A stretch of DNA of 64,000 nt, taken from sequence record LC819009.1, one strand, 5' to 3'. The position numbers were made by a program, and so were the translations under genes. Below the pieces are notes generated by a model that saw nothing but the letters and a program-made list of their open reading frames with translations, ran no database searches and was not told the DNA's origin. Position 1 is the first letter of the stretch, and each line of letters opens with the position of its first letter. Shown piece after piece: positions 22,223 to 64,000 of this stretch.

Positions 22223-22822
22223 TTACCACAAGCTGTAACCAGCAGGTGTGTATTTGGGATTTGCCTGCCAGTCCACAATGGTTGCACCTACCTGACCATT
22301 AGGACTGGAAATGACAGGATAGTAATTGGTTTGTCCCGGCGAATAGGTCGTGAGGCTAAGTGTGCCTTCATTGACGCCATTGCGGTAATAGGTAAACTGT
22401 TTGTTGACAAAATCGACAGCCATGCCGACGTAGTCGCCTTGAGTAAACCCAGTTACACCGTAGTTAGCACGAACGTTGCTGTTGTAAATCAGCTGACTCA
22501 CAGCACCTGTGCAATACCAGAAGACTTCCCCGGAATTGCTGGTCCATGGCGTATTAAAAGTCGTCGTGGTTGTTCCAAGACCAATAAGAGGACTGTATGA
22601 AACAGAACCCTCAAACTGAGTCATAAGAACTTCAAAATACCACTTGCCTCCATTGGCAACGGCTCTGGATAGAGTTGCAAAAACTGAGCCGCCCGTGTTT
22701 CCGCAGTTCGCTCTCAGGTTTCCGTTTGAAACGGAAACCGAAGTAGCTTTAAGTGTTGGGCTAAAAGTCGTTGTTGTTGCTGCGATTGTTTTCTTTTTTA
22801 ACAGCAAGCTAGTTGCCAACAT
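22223..22822 (-). CDS. SPRY/B30.2 (concanavalin-like) domain protein
   Basis: 199 aa; GGKWYFEV and GDYVGMAVDFVNKQFTYYRNG motifs. Confidence 0.8.
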   Translation of the reverse strand: MLATSLLLKKKTIAATTTTFSPTLKATSVSVSNGNLRANCGNTGGSVFATLSRAVANGGKWYFEVLMTQFEGSVSYSPLIGLGTTTTTFNTPWTSNSGEVFWYCTGAVSQLIYNSNVRANYGVTGFTQGDYVGMAVDFVNKQFTYYRNGVNEGTLSLTTYSPGQTNYYPVISSPNGQVGATIVDWQANPKYTPAGYSLW

Positions 22823-22825
22823 AAA

Positions 22826-23425
22826 TCACCACCGAGAAAAGCCGGACGGAATCGGATTCACCAGGTTCGTCGTGAAGTCAACGATCGCAGGCGAACCACC
22901 AGCATTCACGCTACATGAAACCGGATAGTACGTGTGTCCGAGGTTACTGTAAGTGGAAAGGGAGAGTTTTCCTCGCGCAGTTCCACCAAGAATAAATTCG
23001 ATCGTGTTGTTGACCAGATCCAGACAGATACCGATCACACCACCTGCACTTACGAATGTACCGTAGTTCAGACGTGCATCAGCAGCATAGCTGACCTGTG
23101 CATTATTGGGTGCGCTTCCGTAGAAGAGAACCTGATCCAGTGCGCCGCCGCCATACACGTTTGACAACCCTGTGCGTTCAGAACAGATCCCGGTCATTGG
23201 TGCTGCGCCGCCTGACCACCCACTCTCAGTCTGGACAATCAGAATTTCGGTGTACCACTTTCCAGTAGTTTTACCGATAGTGCCGCGAGCACCTGCTCGT
23301 GAGTTGGATGCCAGCGTTGCTCGTGAATTGGTATTCGACAGCGTTACACCGGAAACTACGACAGCAGGATCCCAAGCCAGCAAAGATCCTGTCTTCTTCT
23401 TTAAAAGCAGGGAGTTGTCAAGCAT
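22826..23425 (-). CDS. SPRY/B30.2 domain protein, tandem paralog
   Basis: 199 aa from MLDNSLLLKKK; GKWYTEI and GGVIGICLDLVNNTIEF motifs. Confidence 0.8.
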   Translation of the reverse strand: MLDNSLLLKKKTGSLLAWDPAVVVSGVTLSNTNSRATLASNSRAGARGTIGKTTGKWYTEILIVQTESGWSGGAAPMTGICSERTGLSNVYGGGALDQVLFYGSAPNNAQVSYAADARLNYGTFVSAGGVIGICLDLVNNTIEFILGGTARGKLSLSTYSNLGHTYYPVSCSVNAGGSPAIVDFTTNLVNPIPSGFSRW

Positions 23426-23460
23426 ATAAAGCCCAGTATAATTGGTCAAAAGTCATAGAA

Positions 23461-23488
23461 TCGTACCTAGGCTTTCGCCTAGGTACGA
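23461..23488. terminator. Terminator-like hairpin after tmk
   Basis: TCGTACCTAGGC-TTTC-GCCTAGGTACGA. Confidence 0.7.
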
Positions 23489-23492
23489 GTTC

Positions 23493-24188
23493 TTAACCGA
23501 TGTACTGGATGATTTCGTCGACGGATTTCTTCACTTCAGTGAAGAGGCGAGTTGCGTCAACAGTGAAAAGAGGACCCGCTTCCTGGATGCGACGCTGCGC
23601 GAATTGCAGGCGGAAATTCTGGATGAGATTCTCGAAGAATTCATCCGGTTTCGTTTCGAACGCGTCCTTCGTATTGCCGAGCGCACTCACTCGCTCGTCG
23701 ACACGAGCACGAGACGTTGCCAGATCGATGTCCAGGAAGATCGTGGCGTAGCCTTTGATCTGGCTGTAGAGCCATGCCCGCGTTTGAAGCGGATAGCCTG
23801 CCAGGATGTTGGGCAGATTCAGATGGTAGTCGAACATCTGATCACAGAGCTTCTTAGGGATTCCCTGGGTGAAGTGCTGGTACACCCATGTCGTGTCGTT
23901 CCAACGGTCACTGATGACCACCTGGCCAGACAGAAGGGCAGGTATGATGGTCTCGACCAGTACCCGACGTCGCAGATACAGAATGCACGACAAAACTGCC
24001 GGCATCGGGATTTTCTGATGGATCCATGCGTCCCGCATGAACGATGCTTCTTCGTCTTTCGGGTAGGCAGCCACGACGACGTTCGGAATACCCTTGGCGG
24101 TCAGGTATTCGCCGATGTGTTGCGAGATGCTGCTCTTGCCACTACCGTCGATGCCTTCAACGGTCCAGAAACGATTGTCACTTGCCAC
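23493..24188 (-). CDS. tmk: Thymidylate kinase
   Basis: P-loop VEGIDGSGKSS, VVISDRW motif, IFLDID strand; 231 aa. Confidence 0.9.
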   Translation of the reverse strand: MASDNRFWTVEGIDGSGKSSISQHIGEYLTAKGIPNVVVAAYPKDEEASFMRDAWIHQKIPMPAVLSCILYLRRRVLVETIIPALLSGQVVISDRWNDTTWVYQHFTQGIPKKLCDQMFDYHLNLPNILAGYPLQTRAWLYSQIKGYATIFLDIDLATSRARVDERVSALGNTKDAFETKPDEFFENLIQNFRLQFAQRRIQEAGPLFTVDATRLFTEVKKSVDEIIQYIG

Positions 24189-24294
24189 GATTGGTCTCCT
24201 AGTTTAACCAGGGTATCTGCCGAAAGAATAAAAAAATAAAGCAAAAAAAAATCCCCGGTGTTACCCGGGGAGAAAATACACGCGCCGCCGAGGG

Positions 24295-25065
24295 CTACAC
24301 GCGACGCATGTAGAGACTCAGTGGCACGTAGGACGGATTCACGAAACGATACATCGCAGCGGCACTCTGTTCCTTCTCGCGGCAGTTATTCGCGAAACGA
24401 ACGAAGTGCTCCAACTCGCCCTTGTTCTTGGCGGTGCCGACGTACACACTGTTCTGCTCCTTAAGCGAACTGTAGTAGACTTCGACGCCGCCTTCTTTCG
24501 AGCGAGCATATGCCTGTACGCCATCGGGGATGATGACGTCATGCACAGTCTTGATATAGTTCCGGTTGTACTTCACCGGATACCACAACGACTTGTTGAC
24601 CTCGTCGGTGAACTGACGCAGATTCTCGAAGTAGTAGTTCGCGGCTTCCAGGACCATGTTCTTGTAGTCTGGGTTGTGGAACTCCTGCGCAATGCTGCTG
24701 CCGCTGAAGACACGGATAACAACCTTGCGAGGACCCCGCATTACTGCGACCATCTTCGAAGGAAGAATGAAAACGCCATGGCCAGGAATGACCTTGACGC
24801 CTTCTTCTTTCTTATCAAACAACTGACGTAGCTTGCCTCGCTGGGCGAAAGCTTTCGACTGACCGAGCGCAACGTTGTAGATGCGAAATGTCTCAGCCGA
24901 TACTTCTTCGTCCACGATGGGCGTGAACACGTGATTCTGGCGAATGCTATTCACCCGCCATGCCTTGTCGCCATAGCTGGCGTTAACCATGGACAGGTCC
25001 GAATCGATCGGGAATTCGCGATTCAGAATACGCACTACGTTTTTGCCGACGGAGATCTGTTGCAT
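24295..25065 (-). CDS. Hypothetical protein
   Basis: 256 aa with AAGGA RBS; followed by CCCCGG hairpin and T-run at about 24240-24270. Confidence 0.7.
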   Translation of the reverse strand: MQQISVGKNVVRILNREFPIDSDLSMVNASYGDKAWRVNSIRQNHVFTPIVDEEVSAETFRIYNVALGQSKAFAQRGKLRQLFDKKEEGVKVIPGHGVFILPSKMVAVMRGPRKVVIRVFSGSSIAQEFHNPDYKNMVLEAANYYFENLRQFTDEVNKSLWYPVKYNRNYIKTVHDVIIPDGVQAYARSKEGGVEVYYSSLKEQNSVYVGTAKNKGELEHFVRFANNCREKEQSAAAMYRFVNPSYVPLSLYMRRV

Positions 25066-25099
25066 GTCGATTTTATCCTTACGTTTTGAAAGTTGAAGC

Positions 25100-25837
25100 T
25101 TAAGCTGCGTTGGTGCTTACATCTTCAGAGTTTGCTGCTTCCAGGCTTTCGCCCGATGCTGCTTTTTGGCGAGCCTTGATGATGCAGATCGCCATGTCCA
25201 CGGCCACCAGGAAGTGGGCGTGAGAGGTTTGGTACGGATTCTTCGGAACAGAAACCGTACTGGCCAGCCGTCGCGGATCGCCTGCTTCTTCATAGCTTTC
25301 CAGCGGAGCAGTCGTCTGATACGCGTCGATCATTTCCTTGGTAGCGGCGATGACCGAATCGACCCAGACATACTTCTTCTTCCATGCTGCCTTGTAATAG
25401 CGCTTGGCATCTTCAACCGAATAGCCGGCATTGGCGAGAGTCGCCAGACAGCCTTGTTCGAAGATTGCCCGCGTACGGACAGACAGCGGAATCGCGACGA
25501 TTGTGCGGCCGACTTCTTTTTCATCTTGCTTGCGGATGTTGACGCGCAGGTCCCATTCACCGAGTCGGTGGGGAACGCGGCTCCAACCGTGGAAGAACTG
25601 TACCAGGTCCTTCTGGCGTCCTTCAGACACGATCCGTTCGATTTCTGCTACAGCCGCTTCATCGGCGGCAGATGCGAGAGGTGCAGGGGCTACCCGATGT
25701 GCAGGACGATGGGCTGCATGGTTATTTCCTCCACGACTGAAGGTCGAGGTATGCGGCCGGTGACGTTGGCCTTCTGTGGATTGGGGCGTCTTATTCTTGT
25801 TGCCGCCGAATCGATGTGCCATGTTGAGATAAGTCAT
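25100..25837 (-). CDS. Hypothetical early protein with basic disordered N-terminus
   Basis: GGGAG RBS favours MTYLN at 25837; promoter motif at 25935-25944. Confidence 0.7.
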   Translation of the reverse strand: MTYLNMAHRFGGNKNKTPQSTEGQRHRPHTSTFSRGGNNHAAHRPAHRVAPAPLASAADEAAVAEIERIVSEGRQKDLVQFFHGWSRVPHRLGEWDLRVNIRKQDEKEVGRTIVAIPLSVRTRAIFEQGCLATLANAGYSVEDAKRYYKAAWKKKYVWVDSVIAATKEMIDAYQTTAPLESYEEAGDPRRLASTVSVPKNPYQTSHAHFLVAVDMAICIIKARQKAASGESLEAANSEDVSTNAA

Positions 25838-25934
25838 AATGACTCCCAAGACATAATTTTGGTAAGCGAGGAATTCGCTTGTTTTAACCAACAGAACAGA
25901 ACCCAGCAAAAGTTTTAGCCGGAAATTCATTTTG

Positions 25935-25944
25935 ATTATATATT
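25935..25944 (-). promoter_or_regulatory. Early promoter motif (AATATATAAT)
   Basis: Same motif class as 748-757; AT-rich intergenic region. Confidence 0.55.
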
Positions 25945-26031
25945 GTTGATTTTTTCTGCATTATATCTGAACGCTACACAAATAAAAACAGACATAGACC
26001 AATACCAGAAGCCTTGCGGCCTCTGGTATCG

Positions 26032-26544
26032 TCATTTCTTTTGCTGTTGATTACTAGGCGTTTGATCGAGCAACTTCTCCAACTTCCGAATGGCGCCGTT
26101 TCCGGCACCCAGGAGCTTGGCGCTATGCTTCTTCGCCGAGTTAATCACCTTCAGGAAATCGCGTCGAGGATAACGAATTAACTCATCGAAGGAAAACCCG
26201 AAGATTTCGTGCACCTTGTTTTCGGCAAACTGGTCGAGACGGAAGTCAAACGGGTCCACACGAGCCAGATCCTCAAGCGGCGAGCAGAATAACAGAGGCC
26301 ATGGAACGTTCTTGAAGTCGTCCGGTCCGTCGTGATTGTAGATGCCGAATGCGGTTTCGTACTTCATCCGCATGAACAACTCCGCGTCCACCACATTGGG
26401 TAGTTTGGCGTTGGTCATGGCTTCCAGAATCACGTTGACCGGAGACCTGCCCCTGTCTTCTATTCTCGCCAACTCGGGTTCTAGTCCGATGTGTCCTCCA
26501 GACTCCTCGATGAGAGTCCAAGCAACTTCTGCTCGACCAGCTGA
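26032..26544 (-). CDS. Downstream ORF of putative tail assembly chaperone pair (T-like part, probably reached by -1 frameshift)
   Basis: Open in the -1 frame across the T8 run; C-terminal FGFSFDELIRYPRRDF resembles GT-type chaperone ends; alternative own ATG at 26418. Confidence 0.55.
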   Translation of the reverse strand, partial: SAGRAEVAWTLIEESGGHIGLEPELARIEDRGRSPVNVILEAMTNAKLPNVVDAELFMRMKYETAFGIYNHDGPDDFKNVPWPLLFCSPLEDLARVDPFDFRLDQFAENKVHEIFGFSFDELIRYPRRDFLKVINSAKKHSAKLLGAGNGAIRKLEKLLDQTPSNQQQKK

Positions 26545-28007
26545 AAAAAAACCGAAACCGCATCGAGTGCAATCAGGCGCGGCCACTTGTCGCCGGACAG
26601 GGTGTCCTCGTACTCGTTGACCGAAGTCGTCGCAATGATTGCGACTTGCGTGTTGTTGATGTAGTCGCTGATCGCCTTGAAGAACTTCCGGGAGATCTCG
26701 TCGGAGGCCGAGAGAGACACGAGCACCTTGTCCACGTTTTCACGCGTGGTATAGAGCTCGCCATCTTCTTCGATAGCCTTGACGTAGTGCGAGTACTGGC
26801 GCAGACGGGAAGCCTTAGCCAATTGGCTGATGTACTGCATGCGCTTCTGGTCGGTCGCTTCCGCGCCAAGAGCTTCGTGAACCGCGGCGTTGATTTCGTT
26901 GATCCACTTCTCGCCGGTGTCGAAGTACTCGCGCAGATTCGGCGTATACAGATGCAGCTTCACACCTTCGCCGATTTCGACCACCGTGTTCTGGTTGAAG
27001 ACGAACTGGTCCTTGTAGTCCTTGATCGTCTTGAGCGTCATCGGCGCTTCGATGCGCTTGACCATGTGTGCCAGTTGCTCTTCCTTGAACATTTTGGCGT
27101 TCATGAAGAGACACTTGCGCAGGTCGATGATCTGGTGCAGTTCTTCCTTCGGCAGCTTCGTATCTTCCGTGAAGACAGCCCGCGACATCGGGAAGCCGTT
27201 CGGATAGATCGAGGATGCGACCGACAGAGCGATCAGCGGCAGATCGTTCACGGTGATGTGATCGACCAGGTTTTCCTTGGGCAGATCGTTGACCGTCGTT
27301 TCGATCAGCGAGCCAACCCATGCTTCGAAAACAGCTTTGGCCGTGAAGACCGAGTTGTTCGCGAACATGAGACCGTGCGTGGCCCGGCCGAGCTTGATCG
27401 GTTCAGCGATGATGGTACGCCACAGGCCGATGATGTCGTATTCTTCCAGCGGCTTCACAGTCGCATAGAAGCCCGAGCCAACGAGCGGAACCTGTACCGG
27501 CGAACCCAGACCAAGACGCGCACGAACCGACAGGTTCAAACGCTCCGAGCTCATCTTCGCGCCACGTCCCTTGTTCGTGAACTTGGGACGACCGACGTTG
27601 ACGTTCTGGCCTGCGTAGTTCAGAGCGTTGCGCCATTCGGCATTCGGGTCAGCGAGCGCATCTTCGAACACGCCATGAGCCGGAACCGAACGGAAGCCGT
27701 TGAGCAGCGTCTGATACCAGTTCACCGCATCTTCGTTGACGTCGACTTCGCCCATCTTGGTCGCTGTCATGTCGTCGTTGATACGGCTTGCCGAATCAGG
27801 CAGAAGAGGAACCAGGATATCCTGAAACTTCTTCAGTTCTTCTTCGCTGGGAGCAGGCGACATCAAGTCGGTCTTGCTTTCCCAGTTCTTTGCTTGCTTG
27901 GGCACCTCGACGGTCTGCGGGTCGATACTGACCTGCGTTTCGTCGGGCATGTGAAGCTCGGGCTCGTCACCCGAGCCGCCCTGGTTGTCTTCAGGAGCGA
28001 TTGCCAT
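26481..28007 (-). CDS. Conserved jumbo-phage protein, putative tail/baseplate assembly chaperone (G-like)
   Basis: 508 aa; FYATVKPLEEYD segment reminiscent of T4 gp26-type chaperones; slippery site near the 3' end. Confidence 0.55.
   Translation of the reverse strand: MAIAPEDNQGGSGDEPELHMPDETQVSIDPQTVEVPKQAKNWESKTDLMSPAPSEEELKKFQDILVPLLPDSASRINDDMTATKMGEVDVNEDAVNWYQTLLNGFRSVPAHGVFEDALADPNAEWRNALNYAGQNVNVGRPKFTNKGRGAKMSSERLNLSVRARLGLGSPVQVPLVGSGFYATVKPLEEYDIIGLWRTIIAEPIKLGRATHGLMFANNSVFTAKAVFEAWVGSLIETTVNDLPKENLVDHITVNDLPLIALSVASSIYPNGFPMSRAVFTEDTKLPKEELHQIIDLRKCLFMNAKMFKEEQLAHMVKRIEAPMTLKTIKDYKDQFVFNQNTVVEIGEGVKLHLYTPNLREYFDTGEKWINEINAAVHEALGAEATDQKRMQYISQLAKASRLRQYSHYVKAIEEDGELYTTRENVDKVLVSLSASDEISRKFFKAISDYINNTQVAIIATTSVNEYEDTLSGDKWPRLIALDAVSVFFQLVEQKLLGLSSRSLEDTSD
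26544..26551 (-). promoter_or_regulatory. Putative -1 ribosomal frameshift site (GTT TTT TTT CAG)
   Basis: 8-T run in the correct phase; -1 frame open for 170 more codons. Confidence 0.6.
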
Positions 28008-28019
28008 GTAGCTGGTTCC

Positions 28020-28781
28020 TTAGATGCTGATCAGGCCAGAGCCAACGCGCGGATCCACGTCGTTCGGTTCGGCGGCTTTCGTCGTGTCGACGTCGAAGTC
28101 GGTGGGACGACGGCCTTCAGCCGGCTGGTTGATGATTTCCGACGGTTTGAGTGCATCTTCGCCATCGGCGCTGATACCTTCCATGCCTTCGGCCGGAGCT
28201 TCGACTTCCTTCGCTGCTTGCGGAACGTCGCCTTCGTCGAGGATGGCGACTTCCTGGCCGGCAGCACGCGCAGCTTCGATCTGTTCGACCGTCAGTGCGT
28301 CTTGCGCTTCGAGCAGTTCCTTGAGCGCCTTGTTGTAGATCAGGTTCAGCGCGCCGATGATCGGCTGGAACTTGTTGAAGAGGTCGATGTCGAATGCCTG
28401 ATAGGCTTCGAAGATGCGGTACGCTTTCGAGAGCTCTTCGTAGCTCAGGCACAGCTTACGGATGTGGCCGTGGCTGTCCCAGAGAGCCTGGAATTCCTTG
28501 GCCATTTCGGCGACGAGCGGCTGGATCTTCGCGATTTCGGCGTCGAACGCTTCCTTCTCGCCGTTCTTGGCGACCTTCATCAGCACGACCGGGTGGTTGT
28601 ACTGTGCGAACAGTTCAGCCAGCTTGTTGATGTTCTTCTGGCTGCGTTGGTGAACTTCTTTCAGCTGATACCAGCAGCGGGAGGTCTTCTCGCGATCGAA
28701 CGATTTCTTGCCGCTCGTCATGCCGGCTGCTGCGCGGCGTTCTGCGTCTTTCTGACGACGGCTTGCGGATTTTTGCGTCAT
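28020..28781 (-). CDS. Hypothetical helical protein with acidic tail
   Basis: 253 aa; strong codon bias; GGGGA RBS. Confidence 0.7.
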   Translation of the reverse strand: MTQKSASRRQKDAERRAAAGMTSGKKSFDREKTSRCWYQLKEVHQRSQKNINKLAELFAQYNHPVVLMKVAKNGEKEAFDAEIAKIQPLVAEMAKEFQALWDSHGHIRKLCLSYEELSKAYRIFEAYQAFDIDLFNKFQPIIGALNLIYNKALKELLEAQDALTVEQIEAARAAGQEVAILDEGDVPQAAKEVEAPAEGMEGISADGEDALKPSEIINQPAEGRRPTDFDVDTTKAAEPNDVDPRVGSGLISI

Positions 28782-28895
28782 TTGTCATATCCCCAGTAGG
28801 AATTTTAGATGGTTCACCAGACGATAACTTCAGGTAAATAAAAAAGTATTTATTTACTCTGTTGTGTAGATCCTCTGATGAATAAGGAGAACACT

Positions 28896-29792
28896 ATGCT
28901 CGATCAGAGCTTGGACAACTTTTTGGAACAGGCATTGCCACCGGAGAAGTACCGTCTCTACGTGGACATTATCTCCTATTTGGAGAGCATAGAATACGAC
29001 ACCATCGAGAGTGAGCTACTCAATCTCATCTACATGTCGATTGGCGACGAGAACGAAAAGGTTCCGAAGCCTGAGTCGACCTGCGTGGATGAAATCTACG
29101 GTCACCTTCGCGAGTGTATGATCTCCCAACTTTCGCAAAGCGGTATCATCGCGAATGAAGAGGTCAAGCTAAAGGATGTGTACGATTTGGCCATCGGCCT
29201 TTTCCACATCTCCACTCACGAAGACATCGCAGGCATTGTTGCATGCTGCAGTCTCGATGAAGCCCCGATCCACCAACTGGCTGAAGTACTCCAACTGGTG
29301 ACGACGGTGAGCGCCGATCACTGGATGACAGTCATCGACGAAATTCAACCCGAAGTCATCGACAAGATTGTCGAGATGAGTAAAGAGACGATCAACTCCG
29401 AGTATCAAGTAATGGAGGAGACGGCTGAATATTTACAGAAGATCCGGATCTATTCCGAGTACTGTGTCAAGAAGGGAATGATTGACCTCAAGGTCTTCAA
29501 TCTCGTCTCGAATGTCGTGCTCGGACAGAACTACCAGACGTATCTGGATTCTGGTGTGATTCATGAACTCTTCGAAGGCGATCAGATGGAACGATTGGCG
29601 CTTGAGATGTACGGCATGGCGCTGATGTCCAACGATGCTTCGAAGGATCCGGTCGGAGCTATCCGAACTGTCATCGAGTCATATATCGAGGACACGCGTC
29701 GTATTGTCGACTTGAACTCGAAAGTGCAGCTGGTCAATGCCGAGTTCGTCAAGTTCTATCAAACCACCAGCCAGGGCCTGAACAATGGATAA
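28896..29792 (+). CDS. Conserved jumbo-phage protein adjacent to the vRNAP subunit
   Basis: AAGGAG RBS before MLDQSL at 28896; overlaps the start of the vRNAP gene. Confidence 0.65.
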   Translation: MLDQSLDNFLEQALPPEKYRLYVDIISYLESIEYDTIESELLNLIYMSIGDENEKVPKPESTCVDEIYGHLRECMISQLSQSGIIANEEVKLKDVYDLAIGLFHISTHEDIAGIVACCSLDEAPIHQLAEVLQLVTTVSADHWMTVIDEIQPEVIDKIVEMSKETINSEYQVMEETAEYLQKIRIYSEYCVKKGMIDLKVFNLVSNVVLGQNYQTYLDSGVIHELFEGDQMERLALEMYGMALMSNDASKDPVGAIRTVIESYIEDTRRIVDLNSKVQLVNAEFVKFYQTTSQGLNNG

Positions 29793-31083: not shown

Positions 31084-31109
31084 CACTTTTCTTTCTGGAG
31101 AACATTCTC

Positions 31110-31991: not shown

Positions 31992-32015
31992 TTCGCAGCA
32001 ATGCGGACATAGCTC

Positions 32016-32043: not shown

Positions 32044-32056
32044 GGCTTTATGCCGC

Positions 32057-54809: not shown

Positions 54810-54815
54810 ACATCC

Positions 54816-57050: not shown

Positions 57051-57112
57051 TTTCAGATCCCGAAAACAAAAAAAAATATGGTCAGGGATTTCCCCTGACC
57101 ATACTCCGAACA

Positions 57113-57772
57113 TTACATGTTCTCGTTCAACACCGAAGTCGGATCTTTCTTCTTCGCCGCATAATGCGCTTCAAGCACATCCCACGTCGAGATGATGTCG
57201 CCCTGTTCGATTACGTCGAGATCCCGTTCATCAACGGAATCGTTCATATCCGAATAGAGGACAAATGCGTCTTCGCCTTCACCGAGGCGATTGAAGTCAT
57301 TCTTGATGCCGTGACGATCTTCCGTCCAGATGACACCATCAATGACACGCATGAAGTCCGGGTCATCGAACCCACGTCGTTCGGGATAGCGATTGCGATA
57401 ACTGTCCGAATACCCATCGATTGCCTGCTGTTCATGCAGGATTCTCGACATGATATTAGCCATGAGATAGCGTTGCATCACAGGCTTTGCGTTCTGGATG
57501 GATTCGATCGTCGACAACGGACGGATCACATCTTTACGCATCGGGTCAGCAGTCTGACGAACACGTGCTCGAATACGACGCAGTGCTCGCTCGCCATTAT
57601 ACCGATCAAACGCTTCACGCGAATCCTCAAAGAACCCATTGAAGAGTTCACTGATTCTCGGCGCATAGCGTTCGACACGATCTCTCAGATAACTGAGAGT
57701 TCCCTGATGGGGTTCTCCAAACAATTCGGCGTCGATATCCTCTTCACTGATATAACCGCCTCTGATTCCCAT
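57113..57772 (-). CDS. Conserved jumbo-phage hypothetical protein
   Basis: 219 aa; TAATG overlap with the nvRNAP stop codon. Confidence 0.7.
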   Translation of the reverse strand: MGIRGGYISEEDIDAELFGEPHQGTLSYLRDRVERYAPRISELFNGFFEDSREAFDRYNGERALRRIRARVRQTADPMRKDVIRPLSTIESIQNAKPVMQRYLMANIMSRILHEQQAIDGYSDSYRNRYPERRGFDDPDFMRVIDGVIWTEDRHGIKNDFNRLGEGEDAFVLYSDMNDSVDERDLDVIEQGDIISTWDVLEAHYAAKKKDPTSVLNENM

Positions 57773-59403
57773 TAGTGCAGTGTCCTCGTATTAAACATTT
57801 TGTGCATCCGCGCCAGCTTAGCTGGGTCGGGTCTGCGTGCTTGTTCGCTGTAGTTGTACAGGTGATTCACCACCGACGACACGATCGGTTTGGGCAACGG
57901 CATGTTGTCGCCGATCTTGCGCGGGCCGGACAGTTTCCACGCACCGAAGTGCGGAGCCAGATAACGGAGTTCATCCGTCGTCCAGTTGTCCATGGTCAGG
58001 AAGCCGAACATCTGATCGCCATCGAAGTCAGCATTCGGGCCAGCCACCGAGATGATCGGATAGCTGATCGACATGATCTTCGGATTAGTCTTGATCTTGG
58101 TCACGAACATCCGCTGGATCGAAGTACGATACATGGACGGGTTGCGACCGAAGATAACCGGAATACCACGGCGAACTTTGATCTCGCGAAGCTCGATCTC
58201 TCCATTCTCCAGATACTTCGGTTTCATCTGACCATCGACAATCGAAGCTTCGATTGTCGGCGACAGTTCGTACGGCGACTCATCCAGAAGCTCGTCGAAG
58301 AGTTCTTCGAGCAGCGGATGATGGACGTGCGTATGCGCATTCAGAAAGTACGATGCGTCGTTGTGGCCAAAACCACGACGGAACAACTTACCCATCAAGT
58401 GCAGACGGAACGTCGTTACTGCCAGAGCCCACGGCAGGTGAATCTCGTCATGGTGATGCGGCTCCGTGAGCGAATTGATAACCGCACGGAAGCTGAACCA
58501 ACAGCGAGTTGCGTAAACGTGTTTCCGTACCAGGCCAGGTTTGCCGGCGATGAAGTTCTTTTCGTAATCACGCCCGAACTCGGACAATGCTTCCGAAAAC
58601 TTGGACGCACGGTTTTCCTTTTGGGCAACCGTATAGTCCTTGATATCGCTGTCGATACCGGAGATGTTCCGGACGGCATCGATAATCGTCTTCAACGTCG
58701 TATCCATGTAAGTACCGAACTTGGTGTTCTCGATCACCAGGATGGTCTTGTTGTGCACAGGTACGTGTTGCGAGAAGATGCGATCGCGATACATTGCGAT
58801 AAAGATCTGCATCTCCCTGAGTTTCTCCTTCTTGTCTCTCGTGGAACTGAATTGTGGAAATTCACAAAGCTGACCGATGATCCAGTCAAAGTTGTGATAG
58901 AAGAAGTTCAGCCCGCGCTCGATGCGGCGGTTTTCCAGTTCGTCCATCCACCGACCATGATGCTGGCGATTCGGACGATAGTCCGTATTCGTCAGATACT
59001 TGATGATGTTGAACTTCTGGTTGCTGTTGTTCGAGAGACTGAAGAAGTCCGACAGCAGACGCCAAGCCTGAGGATTGATCAGTGCATCGACGCCTTTAGG
59101 CGCTTCAACCCAGATGATGGGCTCAAGCGGTTTATCCAACACAGCCTGAACCGGTTGCTTACATTTTCGACAGACGGTCCCCTTACCGTTTCTATCTACG
59201 TGATGCTGGCCGAACGTATGCCCACACGAACATTTCGGAATCGTGTCAAGCAGATCGGTATCGTTGTACGTCACGAAGAAGTTTTCGTCGAAGGCCGACT
59301 TCTCCGTTTCCAGCGTGTCCAGTACCTTATTGACGATGATGGGGTCTGATGTTATCTGCGAGAATAACTCGTCATAGTTTTGCATTTCCAAATGTGTGCC
59401 CAT
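57772..59403 (-). CDS. Non-virion RNA polymerase beta' N-terminal/catalytic subunit (gp55-like, uninterrupted)
   Basis: NADFDGD catalytic motif; CSC...CRKC zinc finger; GRNPSM; GGAGG RBS before ATG 59403. Confidence 0.92.
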   Translation of the reverse strand: MGTHLEMQNYDELFSQITSDPIIVNKVLDTLETEKSAFDENFFVTYNDTDLLDTIPKCSCGHTFGQHHVDRNGKGTVCRKCKQPVQAVLDKPLEPIIWVEAPKGVDALINPQAWRLLSDFFSLSNNSNQKFNIIKYLTNTDYRPNRQHHGRWMDELENRRIERGLNFFYHNFDWIIGQLCEFPQFSSTRDKKEKLREMQIFIAMYRDRIFSQHVPVHNKTILVIENTKFGTYMDTTLKTIIDAVRNISGIDSDIKDYTVAQKENRASKFSEALSEFGRDYEKNFIAGKPGLVRKHVYATRCWFSFRAVINSLTEPHHHDEIHLPWALAVTTFRLHLMGKLFRRGFGHNDASYFLNAHTHVHHPLLEELFDELLDESPYELSPTIEASIVDGQMKPKYLENGEIELREIKVRRGIPVIFGRNPSMYRTSIQRMFVTKIKTNPKIMSISYPIISVAGPNADFDGDQMFGFLTMDNWTTDELRYLAPHFGAWKLSGPRKIGDNMPLPKPIVSSVVNHLYNYSEQARRPDPAKLARMHKMFNTRTLH

Positions 59404-59443
59404 CCAACCTCCTTCAAAGCACGATTGTAAAAGATTTCTACTG

Positions 59444-59466
59444 CAGTATCCAATAGATGATATATC
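59444..59466 (-). promoter_or_regulatory. Early promoter motif with extended element (GATATATCAT-CTA-TTGGATACTG)
   Basis: Near-identical to 47067-47089. Confidence 0.6.
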
Positions 59467-59564
59467 GGTATACTTTTTTACATATAGAGACATCTATATA
59501 AAAAAACATACGGATAGATCAAAAGAAAAATCCGCAAGACTCGCTGGATTTTCCTCGACTGTCC

Positions 59565-59837
59565 TTAGTGGACAGTTGCCAATCGGAGTGGTTCCGATTG
59601 GTTGACGGTACGGTAGAGTGCTGCTTGTGTTGCATTGAGGTCATTCAGTTTCCGGCGTCCGTAATCGTTTTCGATCATGAACATCGCTGTTGCAATTTCC
59701 ACAACCGGTATTTCAGGAAAAGCTTGCATGACTGCGAGAGTTGCTTCTCGAATCGTTTTACCTGCATCACGCTCTTTGTAATAAGCTTCGCGAATGTTAC
59801 CGAAACTCAGGAGAGCGGAACTTCTTATTGTGTTCAT
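59565..59837 (-). CDS. Small hypothetical protein
   Basis: About 90 aa between the chimallin terminator and the nvRNAP promoter. Confidence 0.55.
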   Translation of the reverse strand: MNTIRSSALLSFGNIREAYYKERDAGKTIREATLAVMQAFPEIPVVEIATAMFMIENDYGRRKLNDLNATQAALYRTVNQSEPLRLATVH

Positions 59838-59867
59838 CTCAGTTCTCAAGTTGACGGCAAAAAAGAA

Positions 59868-59899
59868 AATAGAGAGAGTCCCGAAGGACTCTCTCTATT
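59868..59899 (-). terminator. Terminator after chimallin
   Basis: AATAGAGAGAGTCC-CGAA-GGACTCTCTCTATT followed by TTCTTTTT. Confidence 0.8.
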
Positions 59900-59930
59900 C
59901 AGTGGGTTACTACTGGCTTACGCCGGCAGC

Positions 59931-61877
59931 TTACCAGCGGTTGTCGTTGCGATCGGCGCGATCGTAGTAACGATCGTCGTAACGGTCACGCGACTGACGC
60001 TGATTGCGATACAGACCACCGCTACCCGGACGGGCCAGGATCGTATCGATGTTGCCATACGTGGTGCGATAGCGATCGCTGCCATCGCGGCTGCTCGACG
60101 TCGGGTTGAGCGACAGCTTGCAGCGGCTGATTGCTTCGATCAGCGCTTCGTCGAAACGGGTATCCCAGTTGTAACGCTGGAAGAAGCCCGTGATGACGGC
60201 GGTCGGCACGAAGTCACGGATGATTTCGTAGCGTTCCGATTGCGACAGCGTGTTGTCGTCGTTCGAAGCTGCGGCCATGCCCCACTTCTGGATCAGGAGC
60301 AGGTCGTCTTCCTTTTCCGGACGCAGCATGTTCAGCAGCGCCAGATAGTCGAAGTCGCGCAGGTCGAGGCGCATGCCGCGATCGCCTTCCGTGTAGTAAC
60401 CGCCATGGATCCGCTCGACGTGGCTGTCGAGGATCGGTTCCGTACGGTCGTACAGGTCTTCGAAGTGACCGTCGGTCAGCACGCAGCACGCGTCGTAGAT
60501 GCGATCCATTGCCTTCTGGCTGCCTTGCGCAGCTGCCATCAGGTCGACATGTTGCCAGGTCGAGGAGCCGCATTCCGGCACGTCGATCGAGTGGATCACG
60601 CCGGGACGCACGGTCGTACGCAGCAGAGCCTGACGCTTCGCAGCGGTGAAGCTCGCGTTCTTCGTTTCCCAGCGCTCGCCGAAGCCGCGTTCCAGATCCT
60701 GGAGGTTGGGTTCGATGGCCAGCGCGCCGATGTTGCGCATGTCGTCTTCACCGACCGAGAGGTTCGGTTCGAAGGCACGCATGATCTCGGCCGATTCACC
60801 AACTGCATGAGCCGTCGCGTGAGCGAGCATCATGGTCGTCGGCGAGAAGTCGACGGTGTCGGTGAACGTGTTGATGAAGCGCAGTGCGTACAGCTGGCAT
60901 TCTTCGCTGCGACGATCGCCACGACGAGCGTACAGATCGTTGCGGCTCGACGCGCCGTCGGCCGGAGCGTAGACGAAGTCGAAGTAGCCGCCGACACGCG
61001 AGATGCGAGTGCCGGTAACCAGCTGGTCGATCGGGTCGCGGCTGTTACGGCCACGGTTTTCGCGCGAGACGAGATCGATGATCATGTCAGCACGGACCGG
61101 CAGATGGCCACGATCGTAGATGTGGTTCTGGCGGTGCTGGATGTGCACGCTGTTGAAGCTGTCGTCGTCGGACTTCAGGCACAGCTGCGGCGCGTCCGGG
61201 TCGTTGCGGTCGATGGCCGTCTTGATGGCGGCGAACGAGTTCTTCACGCAATCGGCGATTGCCTGCGGATCGTCCTTGGCGGTCGGGAAACCACCGTAGA
61301 TGACTTCGGCATCTGCCGTGTACAGGTTTTCGTTCGGATACGCGTTGCCCAGAACTTCCTTCACGACGTCGCGAACCTTCGAGTCGTAGCCGTCGCCCGG
61401 CACTTGCACGACCGTCACGCGATTGCCGCGATAGCTTTCTTCACGCGGACGCAGCTCTTCGGCCGAGCCGGCGAGCAGGAACGTGTGATAGCCGACGCCC
61501 AGCTTTTCCTTGCCACGCTTCTTGCCTGCGATGACGATGCAGGAGAACGGAATGCCGGCGACCGATGCGTCGATCGGGAACACCTGGCAGTCCAGCATGT
61601 TGTTGTCGGTCTTGGCCGGCATGGCTTCCACGAAGTCACGACGGAACACTTCGAGCGCTTCCGCCGTGCCCGTCATTGCGATCGGGGTCGGGTTCATGCG
61701 GCCGATGTTGCTCAGCGATGCCGTACGGATAGTGCCGCTGGAGCGGCTTTCGTCACGGCGCGACGAGCGTTCTTCTTGTGCACGATCTTCTTGTTCGCGG
61801 CGGCTGCCACCTTGCTCTTGCGCACGGCGCATTGCGTCACGGACTTGCGATTGCTGATCTTTGCCTTCGATGCTCAT
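59931..61877 (-). CDS. chmA: Chimallin, major phage-nucleus shell protein
   Basis: 648 aa; segments PVRADM, MRNIGALA, ETKNASF, EPIL and RLDLRDFDYLALLN match recalled chimallin sequence; directly upstream of nvRNAP beta'-N; very strong codon bias. Confidence 0.9.
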   Translation of the reverse strand: MSIEGKDQQSQVRDAMRRAQEQGGSRREQEDRAQEERSSRRDESRSSGTIRTASLSNIGRMNPTPIAMTGTAEALEVFRRDFVEAMPAKTDNNMLDCQVFPIDASVAGIPFSCIVIAGKKRGKEKLGVGYHTFLLAGSAEELRPREESYRGNRVTVVQVPGDGYDSKVRDVVKEVLGNAYPNENLYTADAEVIYGGFPTAKDDPQAIADCVKNSFAAIKTAIDRNDPDAPQLCLKSDDDSFNSVHIQHRQNHIYDRGHLPVRADMIIDLVSRENRGRNSRDPIDQLVTGTRISRVGGYFDFVYAPADGASSRNDLYARRGDRRSEECQLYALRFINTFTDTVDFSPTTMMLAHATAHAVGESAEIMRAFEPNLSVGEDDMRNIGALAIEPNLQDLERGFGERWETKNASFTAAKRQALLRTTVRPGVIHSIDVPECGSSTWQHVDLMAAAQGSQKAMDRIYDACCVLTDGHFEDLYDRTEPILDSHVERIHGGYYTEGDRGMRLDLRDFDYLALLNMLRPEKEDDLLLIQKWGMAAASNDDNTLSQSERYEIIRDFVPTAVITGFFQRYNWDTRFDEALIEAISRCKLSLNPTSSSRDGSDRYRTTYGNIDTILARPGSGGLYRNQRQSRDRYDDRYYDRADRNDNRW

Positions 61878-61980
61878 TTTAGTGCTTTCCTGTTTTGGAA
61901 GAAATGAAAAGTAGATACGCGTACCAGAATTAGTCACGTACGATAAAGAATTGATCGCATTACTAACGCAGATCAACTTT

Positions 61981-61990
61981 GTAATATATC
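61981..61990 (-). promoter_or_regulatory. Early promoter of chimallin (GATATATTAC)
   Basis: Contains the exact phiKZ early consensus TATATTAC. Confidence 0.7.
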
Positions 61991-62178
61991 AATGAAATTT
62001 ATTTAAATCGCACGATATACCACAGCACGCGAACATAGGTGCTACAACATGCAGACGTTGTCATCTGCACAGTATAGGGGTAAAACAATAACTTTTTATT
62101 TCCCTGTACTTTGTCCCTGTCGCATGTTCATGCTATGACTCTGATTGCTAGAAAATTACCTAATACGGATGTGTTCGC

Positions 62179-63258
62179 ATGCTCAGCATCTTCAACGACC
62201 TTCAACCCAGGATGAAAGGTATCATCAGCTTTCCTGAATGGACATTCATTCGGGACGGTCTGATGATGAACCTGGACCACACCAACAAGTATTACCGCAG
62301 TGGTGCTTATGCGGTAGGTTCCGATCATGAACTGGTCAAGTTGTTGTTCGGTTTGACAACCAGTACGGATGAAGAACTGGCCACTTATTACAAACGCGTC
62401 GATGCAAAAGCATTGACGGTTGCTCAGCAATTGGGATTCACGACTTCTATCAGTAAGGGACGCATGTTCAACAATGTGTTCTTCTCCGGTAAAAGTCGAG
62501 AAGTCATCATCGTTCATAACGAAGACTTCGATCCCCAGCAAGTTACGGAGAACTGGCGTGATGCTCGTCCGATTCAAATCCTGCGTCATGGCTTTGACTT
62601 CATCGATTGTTTTCCTATGCAAGGGCAGCTGGAAAGCTCTGGAGTCAGCTGCTTCGCCATCAATCTGTCCATGCTCGGCGTGCAGTATCGAGCGTATCGC
62701 CAATGGCAAAAAAGCTACGTAACAGAAGAGACAGGTCGTAATTCGGTCTATCACTTCCTGTTTGCGTATCCGTTGAACAACATGATTTATGACGCAATGG
62801 ATCATGCGGTGTTTAACCGTTTGGTGCGTCTGAATCAAGATCTACCTACAAGCGACAATCAGTATCGTCATCCGTTTCATGTGACGAACTTCGTGGGTCG
62901 TGTGGATCGAATCCTGGGGAAAGTTCTCGATACACTTCGAAACAATCCTCTTGACTTTTACAACATCTGCGCCACGATCCCTCTGATCAATCAGGGCAGT
63001 TTGCTGGATCTCCTGAAGCTTCCGGACATCTACGAATCGCGGCAAATCAACTGGGCTATTTACATGGCTCGGATCGATATGCTGTTGTTCCTCCTGAGTT
63101 TCGATAACAATCTGAAGATGATGAATCAAAGCGAACTGAGTAAGATCAAGTACGCACTGAAGCTGTATCTGAAGGATGGTACGATTCAGTCTGCAGTACC
63201 GCGCGATCTGTTCGGCAAACAAAAGATCGTCATCGAACGACTGGTTGAAAAGATGTGA
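62179..63258 (+). CDS. Conserved jumbo-phage protein, probably virion-associated
   Basis: 359 aa; divergent from chimallin; assignment by synteny only. Confidence 0.6.
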   Translation: MLSIFNDLQPRMKGIISFPEWTFIRDGLMMNLDHTNKYYRSGAYAVGSDHELVKLLFGLTTSTDEELATYYKRVDAKALTVAQQLGFTTSISKGRMFNNVFFSGKSREVIIVHNEDFDPQQVTENWRDARPIQILRHGFDFIDCFPMQGQLESSGVSCFAINLSMLGVQYRAYRQWQKSYVTEETGRNSVYHFLFAYPLNNMIYDAMDHAVFNRLVRLNQDLPTSDNQYRHPFHVTNFVGRVDRILGKVLDTLRNNPLDFYNICATIPLINQGSLLDLLKLPDIYESRQINWAIYMARIDMLLFLLSFDNNLKMMNQSELSKIKYALKLYLKDGTIQSAVPRDLFGKQKIVIERLVEKM

Positions 63259-63259
63259 A

Positions 63260-63295
63260 CATATACCACTCTGGCGTAAGCCAGAGTGGTATATG
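63260..63295. terminator. Bidirectional terminator-like hairpin
   Basis: CATATACCACTCTGGC-GTAA-GCCAGAGTGGTATATG, perfect 16-bp stem. Confidence 0.8.
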
Positions 63296-63298
63296 GGC

Positions 63299-64000
63299 TT
63301 ATGGGTCTGGTGTGAAATTCGACGTGTATTTCGCGTAACTGTACATCTTGAAGTTATCAAGGTTTCCAATCCACGGGAACTCGGTCGTCGCGCCATTGGC
63401 TGTTTCAGAAATACAACCGATGGTCAGTATCTTCGTATTCAGTGAAAAAGCGGAAGCATTGAAAGTTGTACTTCCGTTCGCAACACCATTCTGATAGATG
63501 GTGAAGACATTACCCTGCTTAACGAACGCAGCATGGTATTTGGTATTCAGGTTGAAACTGTTCGTGGCACCAACGATGGTCAAATGGTTATCGTTTTGTC
63601 CGACGCTATAAAACAGCCCAAGCTTCTGGGAACGTCCAGTTGCATAAAGGGCATAGCCGTTATCGTTGTGATTTCCAAACGTGAAGAAGACAGCTTGACC
63701 AAAGTTGCCTTGCTTCAGATTGTAAAAATAGAATTCGAATGTGAAATCACTGACGAACGGATTAAAATTCCAAGGCGTCGTATCTGTTCGAAGATACGTT
63801 GTCGCCGGAGTAACGTTCGTCGATGCAAACAATGCATTCTGGGATCCAGACAATGCAGGCGTGCTCGCGAGTGTTACTCCTGTGTTTGTGATCGGCCACG
63901 CGTTCGGGCTCTTGTCTGTGAAGTCGCCTTCAAAATCAAGATTCAAGAGCGCTGGCGGTGTAGCTATTTTCTTTTTATAAAGGAGATTGGCACCTAGCAT
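63299..64000 (-). CDS. LamG/concanavalin A-like lectin-fold protein
   Basis: 233 aa; DFTFEFYFY, YHAAFVKQG...IYQNG and GNLDNFKMY..AKYTSNFTP motifs; RBS lies outside the window. Confidence 0.8.
   Translation of the reverse strand: MLGANLLYKKKIATPPALLNLDFEGDFTDKSPNAWPITNTGVTLASTPALSGSQNALFASTNVTPATTYLRTDTTPWNFNPFVSDFTFEFYFYNLKQGNFGQAVFFTFGNHNDNGYALYATGRSQKLGLFYSVGQNDNHLTIVGATNSFNLNTKYHAAFVKQGNVFTIYQNGVANGSTTFNASAFSLNTKILTIGCISETANGATTEFPWIGNLDNFKMYSYAKYTSNFTPDP

What the first reader, a model, noticed from the sequence alone, without database searches (positions are those of the whole stretch)
22223..64000. Three lectin-fold genes share an N-terminal ML..(S/N)LL(L/Y)KKK tag
Seen: MLATSLLLKKKT (22822), MLDNSLLLKKKT (23425) and MLGANLLYKKKI (64000). 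The two SPRY proteins are both 199 aa. The third gene is about 40 kb away and has a different LamG-type domain. All three are more AT-rich than the core. Inference: a short shared docking or targeting peptide attaches interchangeable glycan-binding heads to a common virion or envelope partner, forming a modular receptor-binding repertoire.
Basis: partly seen in the sequence, partly recalled or inferred. Interest (0 to 1): 0.65.

Follow-up and report, generated by a model that had tools for sequence, protein, structure and literature searches.

The report
Shared address tag on phage adhesin-like proteins
A jumbo phage of Ralstonia puts the same 11-residue N-terminal peptide, and the same promoter-like motif, on about eleven small proteins with unrelated binding folds, most likely a plug that fixes swappable binding heads onto the virus particle.

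Summary
The window is the last 64 kb of Ralstonia phage FLC4-5C, a phiKZ-like, nucleus-forming jumbo phage.

- **Extent:** all three quoted N-termini are present. The whole genome holds nine canonical tags (M-L-x-x-x-L-L-x-K-K) plus two degenerate ones, against about 0.01 expected by chance.
- **Folds:** the tag sits on SPRY, LamG, discoidin-type, glycine-rich and unassigned bodies. It is therefore a transferable module, not part of one fold. An AlphaFold model leaves residues 1-15 unstructured.
- **Shared promoter-like motif:** every tagged transcription unit is preceded by one rare motif (GAT-Y-T-T-R-TGAC). This also holds in phage SURPRISE13, RSL2, RSF1 and a metagenomic contig.
- **Turnover:** close relatives keep slot, motif and tag but carry unrelated bodies.
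- **Other phages:** Serratia phage PCH45 and Pectobacterium phage CBB have comparable tag families on LamG and Kelch proteins.
- **Virion link:** four CBB members were found in virions by mass spectrometry. Two PCH45 members lie in its tail-fibre operon.

The best reading is a docking peptide for a modular set of virion surface proteins. Virion presence in this phage, the docking partner and glycan binding are all untested. I rate it a new variant of a known principle.

The parts
22223..22822 (-). Tagged SPRY gene (record gp198, re-extended to 199 aa). It is the second gene of a two-gene unit and starts 3 nt after the stop of the upstream gene.
   Evidence: ORF and translation. SPRY at 36.4 bits. 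AlphaFold pLDDT 86 with residues 1-15 disordered. Foldseek top hits are TRIM9, TRIM67 and Ash2L SPRY. The deposited CDS covers only 22223-22501.
22790..22822 (-). Tag-coding segment of the first SPRY gene (11 codons, MLATSLLLKKK).
   Evidence: pLDDT below 50 and no secondary structure.
22826..23425 (-). Tagged SPRY-like gene (record gp199, re-extended to 199 aa). It is the first gene of the unit.
   Evidence: SPRY at 17.3 bits, below the cut-off. Homologous to the other two SPRY genes by jackhmmer. The deposited CDS covers only 22826-23158.
23393..23425 (-). Tag-coding segment of the second SPRY gene (MLDNSLLLKKK).
23452..23462 (-). Promoter-like motif GATTCTATGAC, 27 nt upstream of the ATG at 23425.
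   Evidence: One of only 14 genome-wide matches to AT-N-Y-T-R-TGA, seven of which precede tagged units. It is conserved at the orthologous place in SURPRISE13, RSL2 and RSF1.
23463..23486 (-). G+C-rich inverted repeat (terminator-like hairpin) directly upstream of the motif. It separates the unit from the thymidylate kinase gene.
   Evidence: Read from the sequence. The same hairpin-then-motif layout precedes gp2 and gp63.
63299..64000 (-). Tagged LamG gene (record gp243, 233 aa). It is the third gene of the unit gp2 > gp1 > gp243, which runs across the ends of the record. Its ATG lies 3 nt after the gp1 stop.
   Evidence: Laminin_G_3 at 48.6 bits. The deposited CDS starts 18 codons downstream. 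The AlphaFold model was unusable, pLDDT 41.
63968..64000 (-). Tag-coding segment of the LamG gene (MLGANLLYKKK).
   Evidence: 9 of 11 residues are identical in the SURPRISE13 orthologue, against 40% identity in the next 19 residues.
62129..62139 (+). Second copy of the promoter-like motif in the window, 40 nt upstream of untagged gene gp242 (62179-63258, +).
   Evidence: Conserved in SURPRISE13 and in contig L012. gp242 matches phrog_3938 and, weakly, a 'virion structural protein' PHROG.

Best explanation
The tag is a linear docking peptide. About eleven small proteins of 150-280 aa each carry it in the same layout:
- an 11-residue N-terminal peptide (M-L-[D/E/x]-x-x-L-L-x-K-K-K);
- a poorly conserved stretch of 10-20 residues, which I read as a flexible linker from its sequence alone;
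- one compact binding domain (SPRY, LamG, discoidin-type, glycine-rich or unassigned).

The genes are transcribed as one regulon from a dedicated promoter-like motif. The peptide most likely folds onto a common socket on the particle, in the tail-fibre or peripheral-baseplate region or another surface structure. One virion would then display a mixed and evolutionarily exchangeable set of adhesin heads.

Shown:
- the tag, its statistics and its position outside the domain;
- its presence on unrelated folds;
- the shared upstream motif;
- body turnover with tag retention;
- comparable tag families in other jumbo phages, some of whose members are virion proteins.

Inferred:
- that the peptide docks;
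- that the partner is on the virion;
- that the heads bind host surface structures;
- that the upstream motif is a promoter.
For: 1. **Tag family.** Nine canonical N-terminal tags against about 0.01 expected. The motif does not occur internally in any long ORF.
2. **Outside the fold.** AlphaFold leaves residues 1-15 below pLDDT 50, and the sandwich starts near residue 20. PDB SPRY domains align from profile position 18.
3. **Unrelated bodies.**
   - The SPRY trio and the LamG group are not linked by jackhmmer, and gp103 stands alone.
   - In SURPRISE13 the tag also sits on an F5/8 type C protein (34.8 bits), on a glycine-rich protein (sub-threshold match) and on bodies with no FLC4-5C homologue.
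4. **Peptide-level selection.**
   - All six Leu codons and both Lys codons are used across 24 tags.
   - The tag is equally conserved in downstream genes of operons that lack their own motif.
   - Orthologue pairs show tag 82%, next 19 residues 37-40%, domain 63-71% identity.
5. **Regulon.** 7 of 14 motif hits in FLC4-5C and 7 of 13 in SURPRISE13 precede tagged units. The only hits in 20 kb of RSL2 and of RSF1 do the same.
6. **Turnover in fixed slots**.
7. **Virion link by homology.**
   - SURPRISE13 gp104 is about 30% identical to a tagged LamG protein of PCH45, which matches phrog_6011 'virion structural protein'.
   - That PCH45 protein is about 33% identical to CBB_549.
   - CBB_548, 549, 551 and 552 share their own N-terminal tag and were found in virions by MS.
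   - By my gene count, PCH45 gp108 and gp109 carry the tag and lie in the operon gp107-111, which the authors report as essential and detected by proteomics.
8. **Fold context.** SPRY folds closest to this one among viral models include phage tail-fibre proteins. The LamG bodies match PHROGs for baseplate wedge and virion proteins.
Against: - No proteomic or structural data exist for FLC4-5C or its genus in the papers I could read. The RSL2/RSF1 virion study was not held.
- The genes are scattered over five loci. Several sit next to replication genes, namely the two DNA polymerase halves and thymidylate kinase, rather than in the tail module.
- The PVP-SE1 homologue lies among early genes.
- No T4gp10-like docking domain was found by Pfam in fibre or baseplate candidates.
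- The same upstream motif also precedes a phosphoheptose-isomerase-like gene. It is absent upstream of the major capsid and sheath genes, so co-expression with the structural genes is unproven.
- SPRY domains in solved structures bind proteins, not glycans.
- The PCH45 proteomic statement is at operon level, and its data tables were not available.
- The structural evidence rests on one model built from nine sequences. The LamG model failed.
Confidence: 0.5

Rival explanations
1. Intracellular adaptor family. The tag docks the variable recognition domains onto a hub inside the infected cell, such as a host protease or chaperone, the nuclear shell or an import factor. The aim would be to capture or relocate host or defence proteins. 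Eukaryotic SPRY and Kelch proteins combine a variable recognition domain with a docking element in the same way.
For: - The closest solved folds are substrate-recognition SPRY domains of TRIM, SPSB and Ash2L proteins.
- Kelch heads occur in the PCH45 and CBB families.
- Several genes lie beside replication genes, and in PVP-SE1 among early genes.
- The same motif precedes a gene matching a host-takeover PHROG.
- Low GC3 and rapid turnover fit accessory conflict genes.
Against: - Discoidin, LamG and glycine-rich modules are typical of phage surface proteins.
- Homologous and analogous tagged proteins are in CBB virions and in a tail-fibre operon.
- The same body family with a similar N-terminus occurs in phages that build no nucleus.
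Confidence: 0.17
2. Packaging signal for proteins carried inside the head and ejected into the host. This would work like the short N-terminal capsid-targeting sequence of the T4 internal proteins.
For: - It is a roughly 10-residue N-terminal tag shared by unrelated proteins of one phage.
- Chimalliviruses package many proteins.
Against: - No conserved acidic protease site follows the tag, and the residues after it are not conserved.
- The bodies are extracellular-type binding modules.
- None matches the phiKZ internal-head family, which is present separately in this genus as SURPRISE13 gp184/185.
Confidence: 0.1
3. Expression element rather than protein signal. The conserved first 33 nt would be an A/T-rich translation-initiation or promoter-downstream element that the regulon needs. 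The peptide would be a by-product.
For: - Leu codons in the tag are strongly skewed to CTT and TTA. TTA accounts for 13 of 58 tag Leu codons, against 7 of 155 in the bodies and 5 of 628 in core genes.
- Three genes share 22 identical nucleotides.
- phiKZ late promoters depend on undefined downstream sequence.
Against: - All six Leu codons and both Lys codons occur at the conserved positions.
- The motif-to-ATG distance varies between 12 and 29 nt.
- Genes inside operons, far from any motif, keep the tag.
- Residues 2-3 are conserved as amino acids.
- No alternative frame opens after the slippery-looking run.
Confidence: 0.08
4. Plain paralogy. The tag would be the conserved first strand of one diverged fold family.
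For: SPRY and Laminin_G_3 belong to the same Pfam clan. The tagged genes often sit in tandem.
Against: - The tag also sits on F5/8 type C, on glycine-rich bodies and, in the variant used by other genera, on Kelch propellers.
- It lies outside the modelled and solved SPRY domain.
- It is followed by a poorly conserved stretch.
Confidence: 0.05

Closest known systems
Conserved N-terminal docking peptides of secondary receptor-binding proteins (K1-5/K1E/SP6, G7C, CBA120, Klebsiella KP32/KP34 groups), as reviewed in PMC6872550
   Same: Peptides as short as 7 residues in some groups, and up to 29 residues in others, sit at the N-terminus of otherwise unrelated receptor-binding proteins of one phage. 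They are thought or shown to plug into a common adaptor. The heads are exchanged between relatives while the peptide stays.
   Different: - The heads there are trimeric tailspikes or depolymerases encoded in the tail module, and the socket is a T4gp10-like domain.
- Here the heads are small single β-sandwich domains, and the genes are spread over five loci with their own promoter-like motif.
- No T4gp10-like domain was found here, and virion presence is unproven.
Pectobacterium phage CBB array CBB_548-552 (Rak2-like jumbo phage)
   Same: - It is a tandem set of proteins of 217-285 aa with LamG or Kelch heads, all starting with one shared N-terminal peptide of about 12 residues.
- Four of them were detected in virions by MS.
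- CBB_549 is a distant homologue of tagged proteins of PCH45.
   Different: - The tag sequence differs (MLPF-x-R...Y-x-N type).
- The shared N-terminus is my observation, not the authors'.
- The phage builds no nucleus.
- The position of these proteins on the particle is unknown. The authors could not assign the tail whiskers to any gene.
DUF7941 'fibre cloud' of chimalliviruses (Goslar preprint 10.64898/2026.04.21.720040)
   Same: It is a chimallivirus-specific N-terminal docking module followed in some members by carbohydrate-binding heads. It is proposed to hang from the peripheral baseplate and to assemble by a disordered segment binding a globular domain. FLC4-5C has a DUF7941 protein, gp177, next to its tail fibre gene.
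   Different: The module there is a globular domain plus linker, not an 11-residue peptide. None of the tagged proteins has DUF7941. Any link between the two systems is speculation.
T4 capsid-targeting sequence of internal proteins
   Same: A short N-terminal peptide shared by unrelated proteins directs them into the particle (from my own knowledge, not tested here).
   Different: That signal is removed by the prohead protease and sends cargo inside the head. No conserved cleavage site follows the tag here.

Membership tests
SPRY / B30.2 domain (PF00622) | Match to the Pfam model above the gathering score | tested here: met
   22223-22822 scores 36.4 bits against a cut-off of 26.3. gp1 scores 35.5 bits. 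The second window gene, 22826-23425, reaches only 17.3 bits but joins the other two by jackhmmer at E about 1e-90.
SPRY / B30.2 domain (PF00622) | Bent β-sandwich fold superposable on solved SPRY domains | tested here: met
   AlphaFold pLDDT 86. Foldseek against the PDB: TRIM9, TRIM67 and Ash2L, E about 1e-10, TM 0.7-0.85.
Laminin_G_3 / ConA-like lectin (PF13385) | Match to the Pfam model above the gathering score | tested here: met
   63299-64000 scores 48.6 bits against a cut-off of 27.6. gp63 scores 56.4 and gp89 49.1. gp2 (20.8) and gp102 (22.1) are below the cut-off.
Laminin_G_3 / ConA-like lectin (PF13385) | Carbohydrate binding | not testable with these tools
   No ligand data. The structure model of the window's LamG protein failed, pLDDT 41.
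Anchor-branch receptor-binding systems with N-terminal docking peptide | Short conserved N-terminal peptide shared by two or more otherwise unrelated proteins of one phage | tested here: met
   Nine canonical tags on at least three body families not linked to one another by sequence search.
Anchor-branch receptor-binding systems with N-terminal docking peptide | A primary fibre or adaptor protein with a T4gp10-like branching domain | tested here: inconclusive
   No such Pfam hit in ten candidates, among them the tail fibre gp176, gp173, gp175, gp177 and several proteins annotated as virion structural. The literature detects these domains by profile-profile methods that I could not apply to these proteins.
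Anchor-branch receptor-binding systems with N-terminal docking peptide | The peptide-bearing proteins are components of the virion | not testable with these tools
   Indirect only: MS of CBB homologues and analogues and the PCH45 tail-fibre operon.
Anchor-branch receptor-binding systems with N-terminal docking peptide | Genes located in the tail or receptor-binding module | tested here: not met
   Five dispersed loci. Two are beside DNA polymerase genes, and none lies in the gp173-177 fibre module.
T4-type capsid-targeting sequence | A conserved prohead-protease cleavage site directly after the tag | tested here: not met
   The residues after the tag are variable, and no acidic residue is conserved.
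DUF7941 fibre proteins | Presence of the DUF7941 module | tested here: not met
   No DUF7941 hit in any tagged protein. Only gp177 carries it.

The most novel reading that the evidence does not exclude
Jumbo myoviruses of several lineages (Chiangmaivirus, PCH45-like and Erwinia chimalliviruses, Rak2-like phages) may use lineage-specific linear 'address labels' of about 10 residues. With them, a freely exchangeable and separately regulated set of small adhesin heads (SPRY, LamG, discoidin, Kelch, glycine-rich) would plug into one socket on the particle. That would make an open, cassette-like surface repertoire, different from classical trimeric fibres. It might account for unassigned whiskers or fibre clouds and for the broad host ranges of these phages.
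Probability: 0.4. Interest if true: 0.72.

Novelty: new variant of a known kind. Interest (0 to 1): 0.6.

Why it matters
- If the tag is a docking peptide, it defines how chimalliviruses display a mixed and fast-evolving set of binding modules. It also gives a simple sequence rule for finding these proteins, most of which are mis-annotated or truncated in deposited records.
- It would connect three loose ends: the many small lectin-like genes of jumbo phages, the unassigned whisker or fibre-cloud densities on their particles, and their unusually broad host ranges.
- The shared upstream motif offers a candidate promoter class for a genus with no transcription data.
- Even if the virion model fails, a peptide shared by unrelated folds under one regulatory motif points to a common partner worth identifying.

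Tried and rejected
- **Programmed frameshift at the T-TTA-AAA-AAG run:** the -1 and +1 frames close after 1-71 codons, and the run is not conserved among tags. Rejected.
- **Tag as part of the fold:** rejected.
- **Wider distribution by sequence search:**
  - The two large protein searches gave only 7 and 2 close relatives.
  - The exhaustive search gave generic multi-LamG proteins with no information on the tag.
  - 80 IMG/VR loci (993 kb) held the tag only in RSL2, RSF1 and one related contig.
- **Variovorax and cyanophage LamG hits:** they lack the tag.
- **AlphaFold model of the window's LamG protein:** unusable, pLDDT 41.
- **RP31 virion proteome:** its ORF62 is the DUF7941-unrelated DUF7194 neighbour (FLC4-5C gp62), not a tagged protein. 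RP31 has no tagged gene at that slot.
- **Papers:** the RSL2/RSF1 virion paper and the PCH45 data tables were not available.
- **Timing class of the motif:** undecided. It resembles the phiKZ late TATG start motif and occurs before the terminase gene, but not before the capsid or sheath genes.
- **Tag-like peptide inside gp177 or any other long ORF:** none found.

Full report
**Identity of the window**
- The window is 100% identical to Ralstonia phage FLC4-5C (LC819009.1), positions 161608-225607, and ends at the end of the record.
- The phage is phiKZ-like and nucleus-forming. The window encodes a protein matching the PHROG annotated 'nuclear shell protein' (the chimallin family), at 59931-61976 on the minus strand, and several split RNA-polymerase subunits.
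- Its relatives are RSL2, RSF1 (genus Chiangmaivirus), FLC6, FLC8, RsoM3USA and Burkholderia phage SURPRISE13.
- It infects bacteria, so nothing here concerns a virus of animals, people or crops. No broken genes are involved.

**The observation**
- Pfam gives SPRY for 22223-22822. It gives a sub-threshold SPRY match for 22826-23425, which is nevertheless a clear homologue. It gives Laminin_G_3 for 63299-64000.
- I read the rest of the genome as separate loci and scanned all six frames. Six more genes carry the same N-terminus: gp1, gp2, gp63, gp89, gp102 and gp103.
- Two further genes carry degenerate versions, gp101 and gp90.
- About 0.01 such N-termini are expected per genome, and shuffles never gave more than 2.
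- The motif occurs nowhere inside any long ORF.
- The gene at 63299-64000 is the last of a three-gene unit (gp2, gp1, gp243) that crosses the arbitrary ends of the record.
- The deposited annotation starts six of the nine genes downstream of the tag, which is why the family is invisible in the record.

**Is the tag part of the fold?**
- An AlphaFold model of the first SPRY protein is confident (pLDDT 86), yet residues 1-15 are below 50 and unstructured. The sandwich begins near residue 20.
- A profile of the family aligns to solved SPRY domains only from position 18.
- The fold matches TRIM9, TRIM67 and Ash2L SPRY domains.
- After the tag comes a stretch that is variable between orthologues. 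Identity is 82% in the tag, 37-40% in the next 19 residues and 63-71% in the domain.
- The model of the LamG protein failed, so the structural argument rests on the SPRY member and on the fold diversity described next.

**One family or a module?**

| Genome | Body type carrying a tag | Evidence |
|---|---|---|
| FLC4-5C | SPRY trio (gp1 and the two window genes) | Not linked to the LamG group by jackhmmer |
| FLC4-5C | LamG group (gp63, gp89, gp243, gp102; gp2 marginal) | |
| FLC4-5C | gp103, no family assigned | Stands alone |
| SURPRISE13 | F5/8 type C (discoidin-type) | 34.8 bits |
| SURPRISE13 | Glycine-rich | 22.1 bits, below the cut-off of 24.3 |
| SURPRISE13 | Four bodies with no FLC4-5C homologue | |

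- I found no untagged paralogue of the tagged bodies in FLC4-5C.
- The tag is therefore a transferable module. It is not the relic of a single ancestral fold.

**Protein or nucleic-acid constraint?**
- Across 24 tags from five genomes, all six Leu codons and both Lys codons are used at the conserved positions.
- The tag is equally well kept in second and third genes of operons, which start 1-12 nt after the previous stop.
- That indicates selection on the peptide.
- One nucleotide bias is superimposed and remains unexplained. TTA and CTT are strongly enriched in the tag compared with the bodies and with core genes.
- The slippery-looking A/T run opens no alternative frame.

**A regulon**
- A rare motif, summarised as GAT-Y-T-T-R-TGAC, lies 12-29 nt upstream of the first gene of every tagged unit. 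It often follows a terminator-like hairpin.
- The loose pattern AT-N-Y-T-R-TGA matches only 14 sites on both strands of FLC4-5C, and seven of them are these sites.
- In SURPRISE13 the figures are 13 sites and 7.
- In 20 kb each of RSL2 and RSF1 the single hit precedes the SPRY pair. In the metagenomic contig L012, one of its two hits precedes the first of its two tagged genes, a SPRY gene.
- The motif contains a T-R-T-G core like the phiKZ late-promoter start motif TATG, but its timing class here is unknown.
  - It also precedes gp242, gp44 and a phosphoheptose-isomerase-like gene.
  - It is absent before the capsid and sheath genes.

**Turnover**
- Tagged genes have low GC3, 0.42-0.57 against 0.58-0.81 in core genes.
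- The repertoire differs among close relatives.
  - gp63 is missing from RSL2 and RSF1.
  - The gp243 type is missing from RSF1 and RsoM3USA.
  - SURPRISE13 lacks the SPRY gene between gp2 and the gp243 orthologue.
- At three slots SURPRISE13 keeps motif and tag but has an unrelated body.

**Beyond the genus**
- Serratia phage PCH45 has eight genes with a related N-terminus (M-L-E-x-hydrophobic-L). The bodies are LamG, Kelch and unassigned.
- Three of the eight match phrog_6011, annotated 'virion structural protein'.
- Counting annotated genes in order, two of the eight are gp108 and gp109 of the operon gp107-111. This numbering is my inference. It agrees with the functions the authors give for gp50, gp81, gp87/88 and gp111.
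- That operon holds the tail fibre and its chaperones. The authors report it as essential and detected by virion proteomics.
- SURPRISE13 gp104 is a distant homologue of one of these PCH45 proteins, which in turn is homologous to CBB_549.
- In Pectobacterium phage CBB, the array CBB_548-552 (LamG and Kelch heads) shares its own 12-residue N-terminal peptide.
- CBB_548, 549, 551 and 552 were found in virions by MS. The authors could not assign the tail whiskers of that phage to any gene.
- Small LamG proteins with a similar start also occur in Vequintavirinae, which form no nucleus. That argues against a nucleus-specific role.

**Interpretation**
- The architecture is that of a docking peptide: a conserved short peptide, then a variable stretch, then an interchangeable binding domain.
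- The closest known principle is the conserved N-terminal peptide, as short as seven residues, of secondary receptor-binding proteins in K1-5, G7C, CBA120 and Klebsiella phages.
- A 2026 preprint describes a different modular docking system in chimalliviruses, the DUF7941 fibre cloud at the peripheral baseplate.
- FLC4-5C has one such protein, gp177, beside its fibre gene. It is a candidate partner, but only by speculation.
- Earlier comparative work noted discoidin, Laminin G3 and SPRY domains in jumbo phages as tail-fibre or virion associated. It does not mention a shared tag or motif.
- I found no paper describing either the tag or the motif.
- I therefore favour the virion-docking model at about 0.5 confidence. 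The main rival is an intracellular adaptor role.

**Limits**
- There are no virion data for this genus and no identified partner.
- Only one structure model was usable.
- Pfam assignments for gp2, gp102 and the glycine-rich proteins are below threshold.
- The promoter reading is by analogy.
- I also declare a slip.

Noticed in passing
window 20030-22171 (+), and LC819009.1 1388-3538 (locus L001): The family-B DNA polymerase is split into two distant genes. The window piece has an N-terminal DUF4326 domain if read from the GTG at 20030. Both halves are flanked by tagged genes, in FLC4-5C and in SURPRISE13 alike.
   Followed up: partly
L002 12977-13507 (gp64) and L002 35492-36181 (gp88): A second shared N-terminal module, about 45 residues with repeated G-G-V-W-K-like units. 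It links gp64 and gp88, each of which lies next to a tagged gene (phrog_25859 and phrog_36019 cross-match over positions 1-45). SURPRISE13 gp87 and gp88 have it too.
   Followed up: partly
LC819009.1 about 86925-86940 (L002 36925-36940): Two copies of the promoter-like motif lie back to back on opposite strands between gp89 and gp90, forming a compact divergent control region. The arrangement is conserved in SURPRISE13.
   Followed up: partly
L003 47748-48233 (gp164): A phosphoheptose-isomerase-like gene (phrog_1238, host-takeover category) carries the same upstream motif as the tagged genes, in both FLC4-5C and SURPRISE13.
   Followed up: no
window 22790-22822 and the tags of gp2, gp63, gp89: The Leu-Lys core is often encoded as CTT TTA AAA AAG AAA. 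This uses the otherwise almost unused TTA codon and forms two overlapping slippery-type heptamers in frame. No alternative ORF follows, and the bias is unexplained.
   Followed up: partly
window 13401-16340 (-) versus 13404-16322 (+): An antisense ORF of 979 aa mirrors the 972-aa gene annotated as a putative virion structural protein almost end to end. Several other long mirrored ORF pairs occur in the window. They are probably a codon-composition effect.
   Followed up: no
L100 about 5001-5660 (Salmonella phage PVP-SE1, gene 10): The annotated start is probably too far downstream. An in-frame GTG with a Shine-Dalgarno-like sequence adds an N-terminus resembling the PCH45 tag. The gene sits among early replication genes.
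   Followed up: no
SURPRISE13 PP856017.1 186219-186908 (L097 39219-39908, -): An unannotated 229-aa ORF with a tag variant fills the gap between the DNA polymerase gene and gp195. It has no Pfam match and no homologue in FLC4-5C.
   Followed up: partly
upstream of L003 24375 (major capsid gene) and L001 22890 (gp28): A different upstream motif (AAACCT-T-rich) is shared by the capsid gene and gp28. CTTTTT-type hexamers are enriched upstream of ORFs genome-wide, which suggests a separate promoter class.
   Followed up: no
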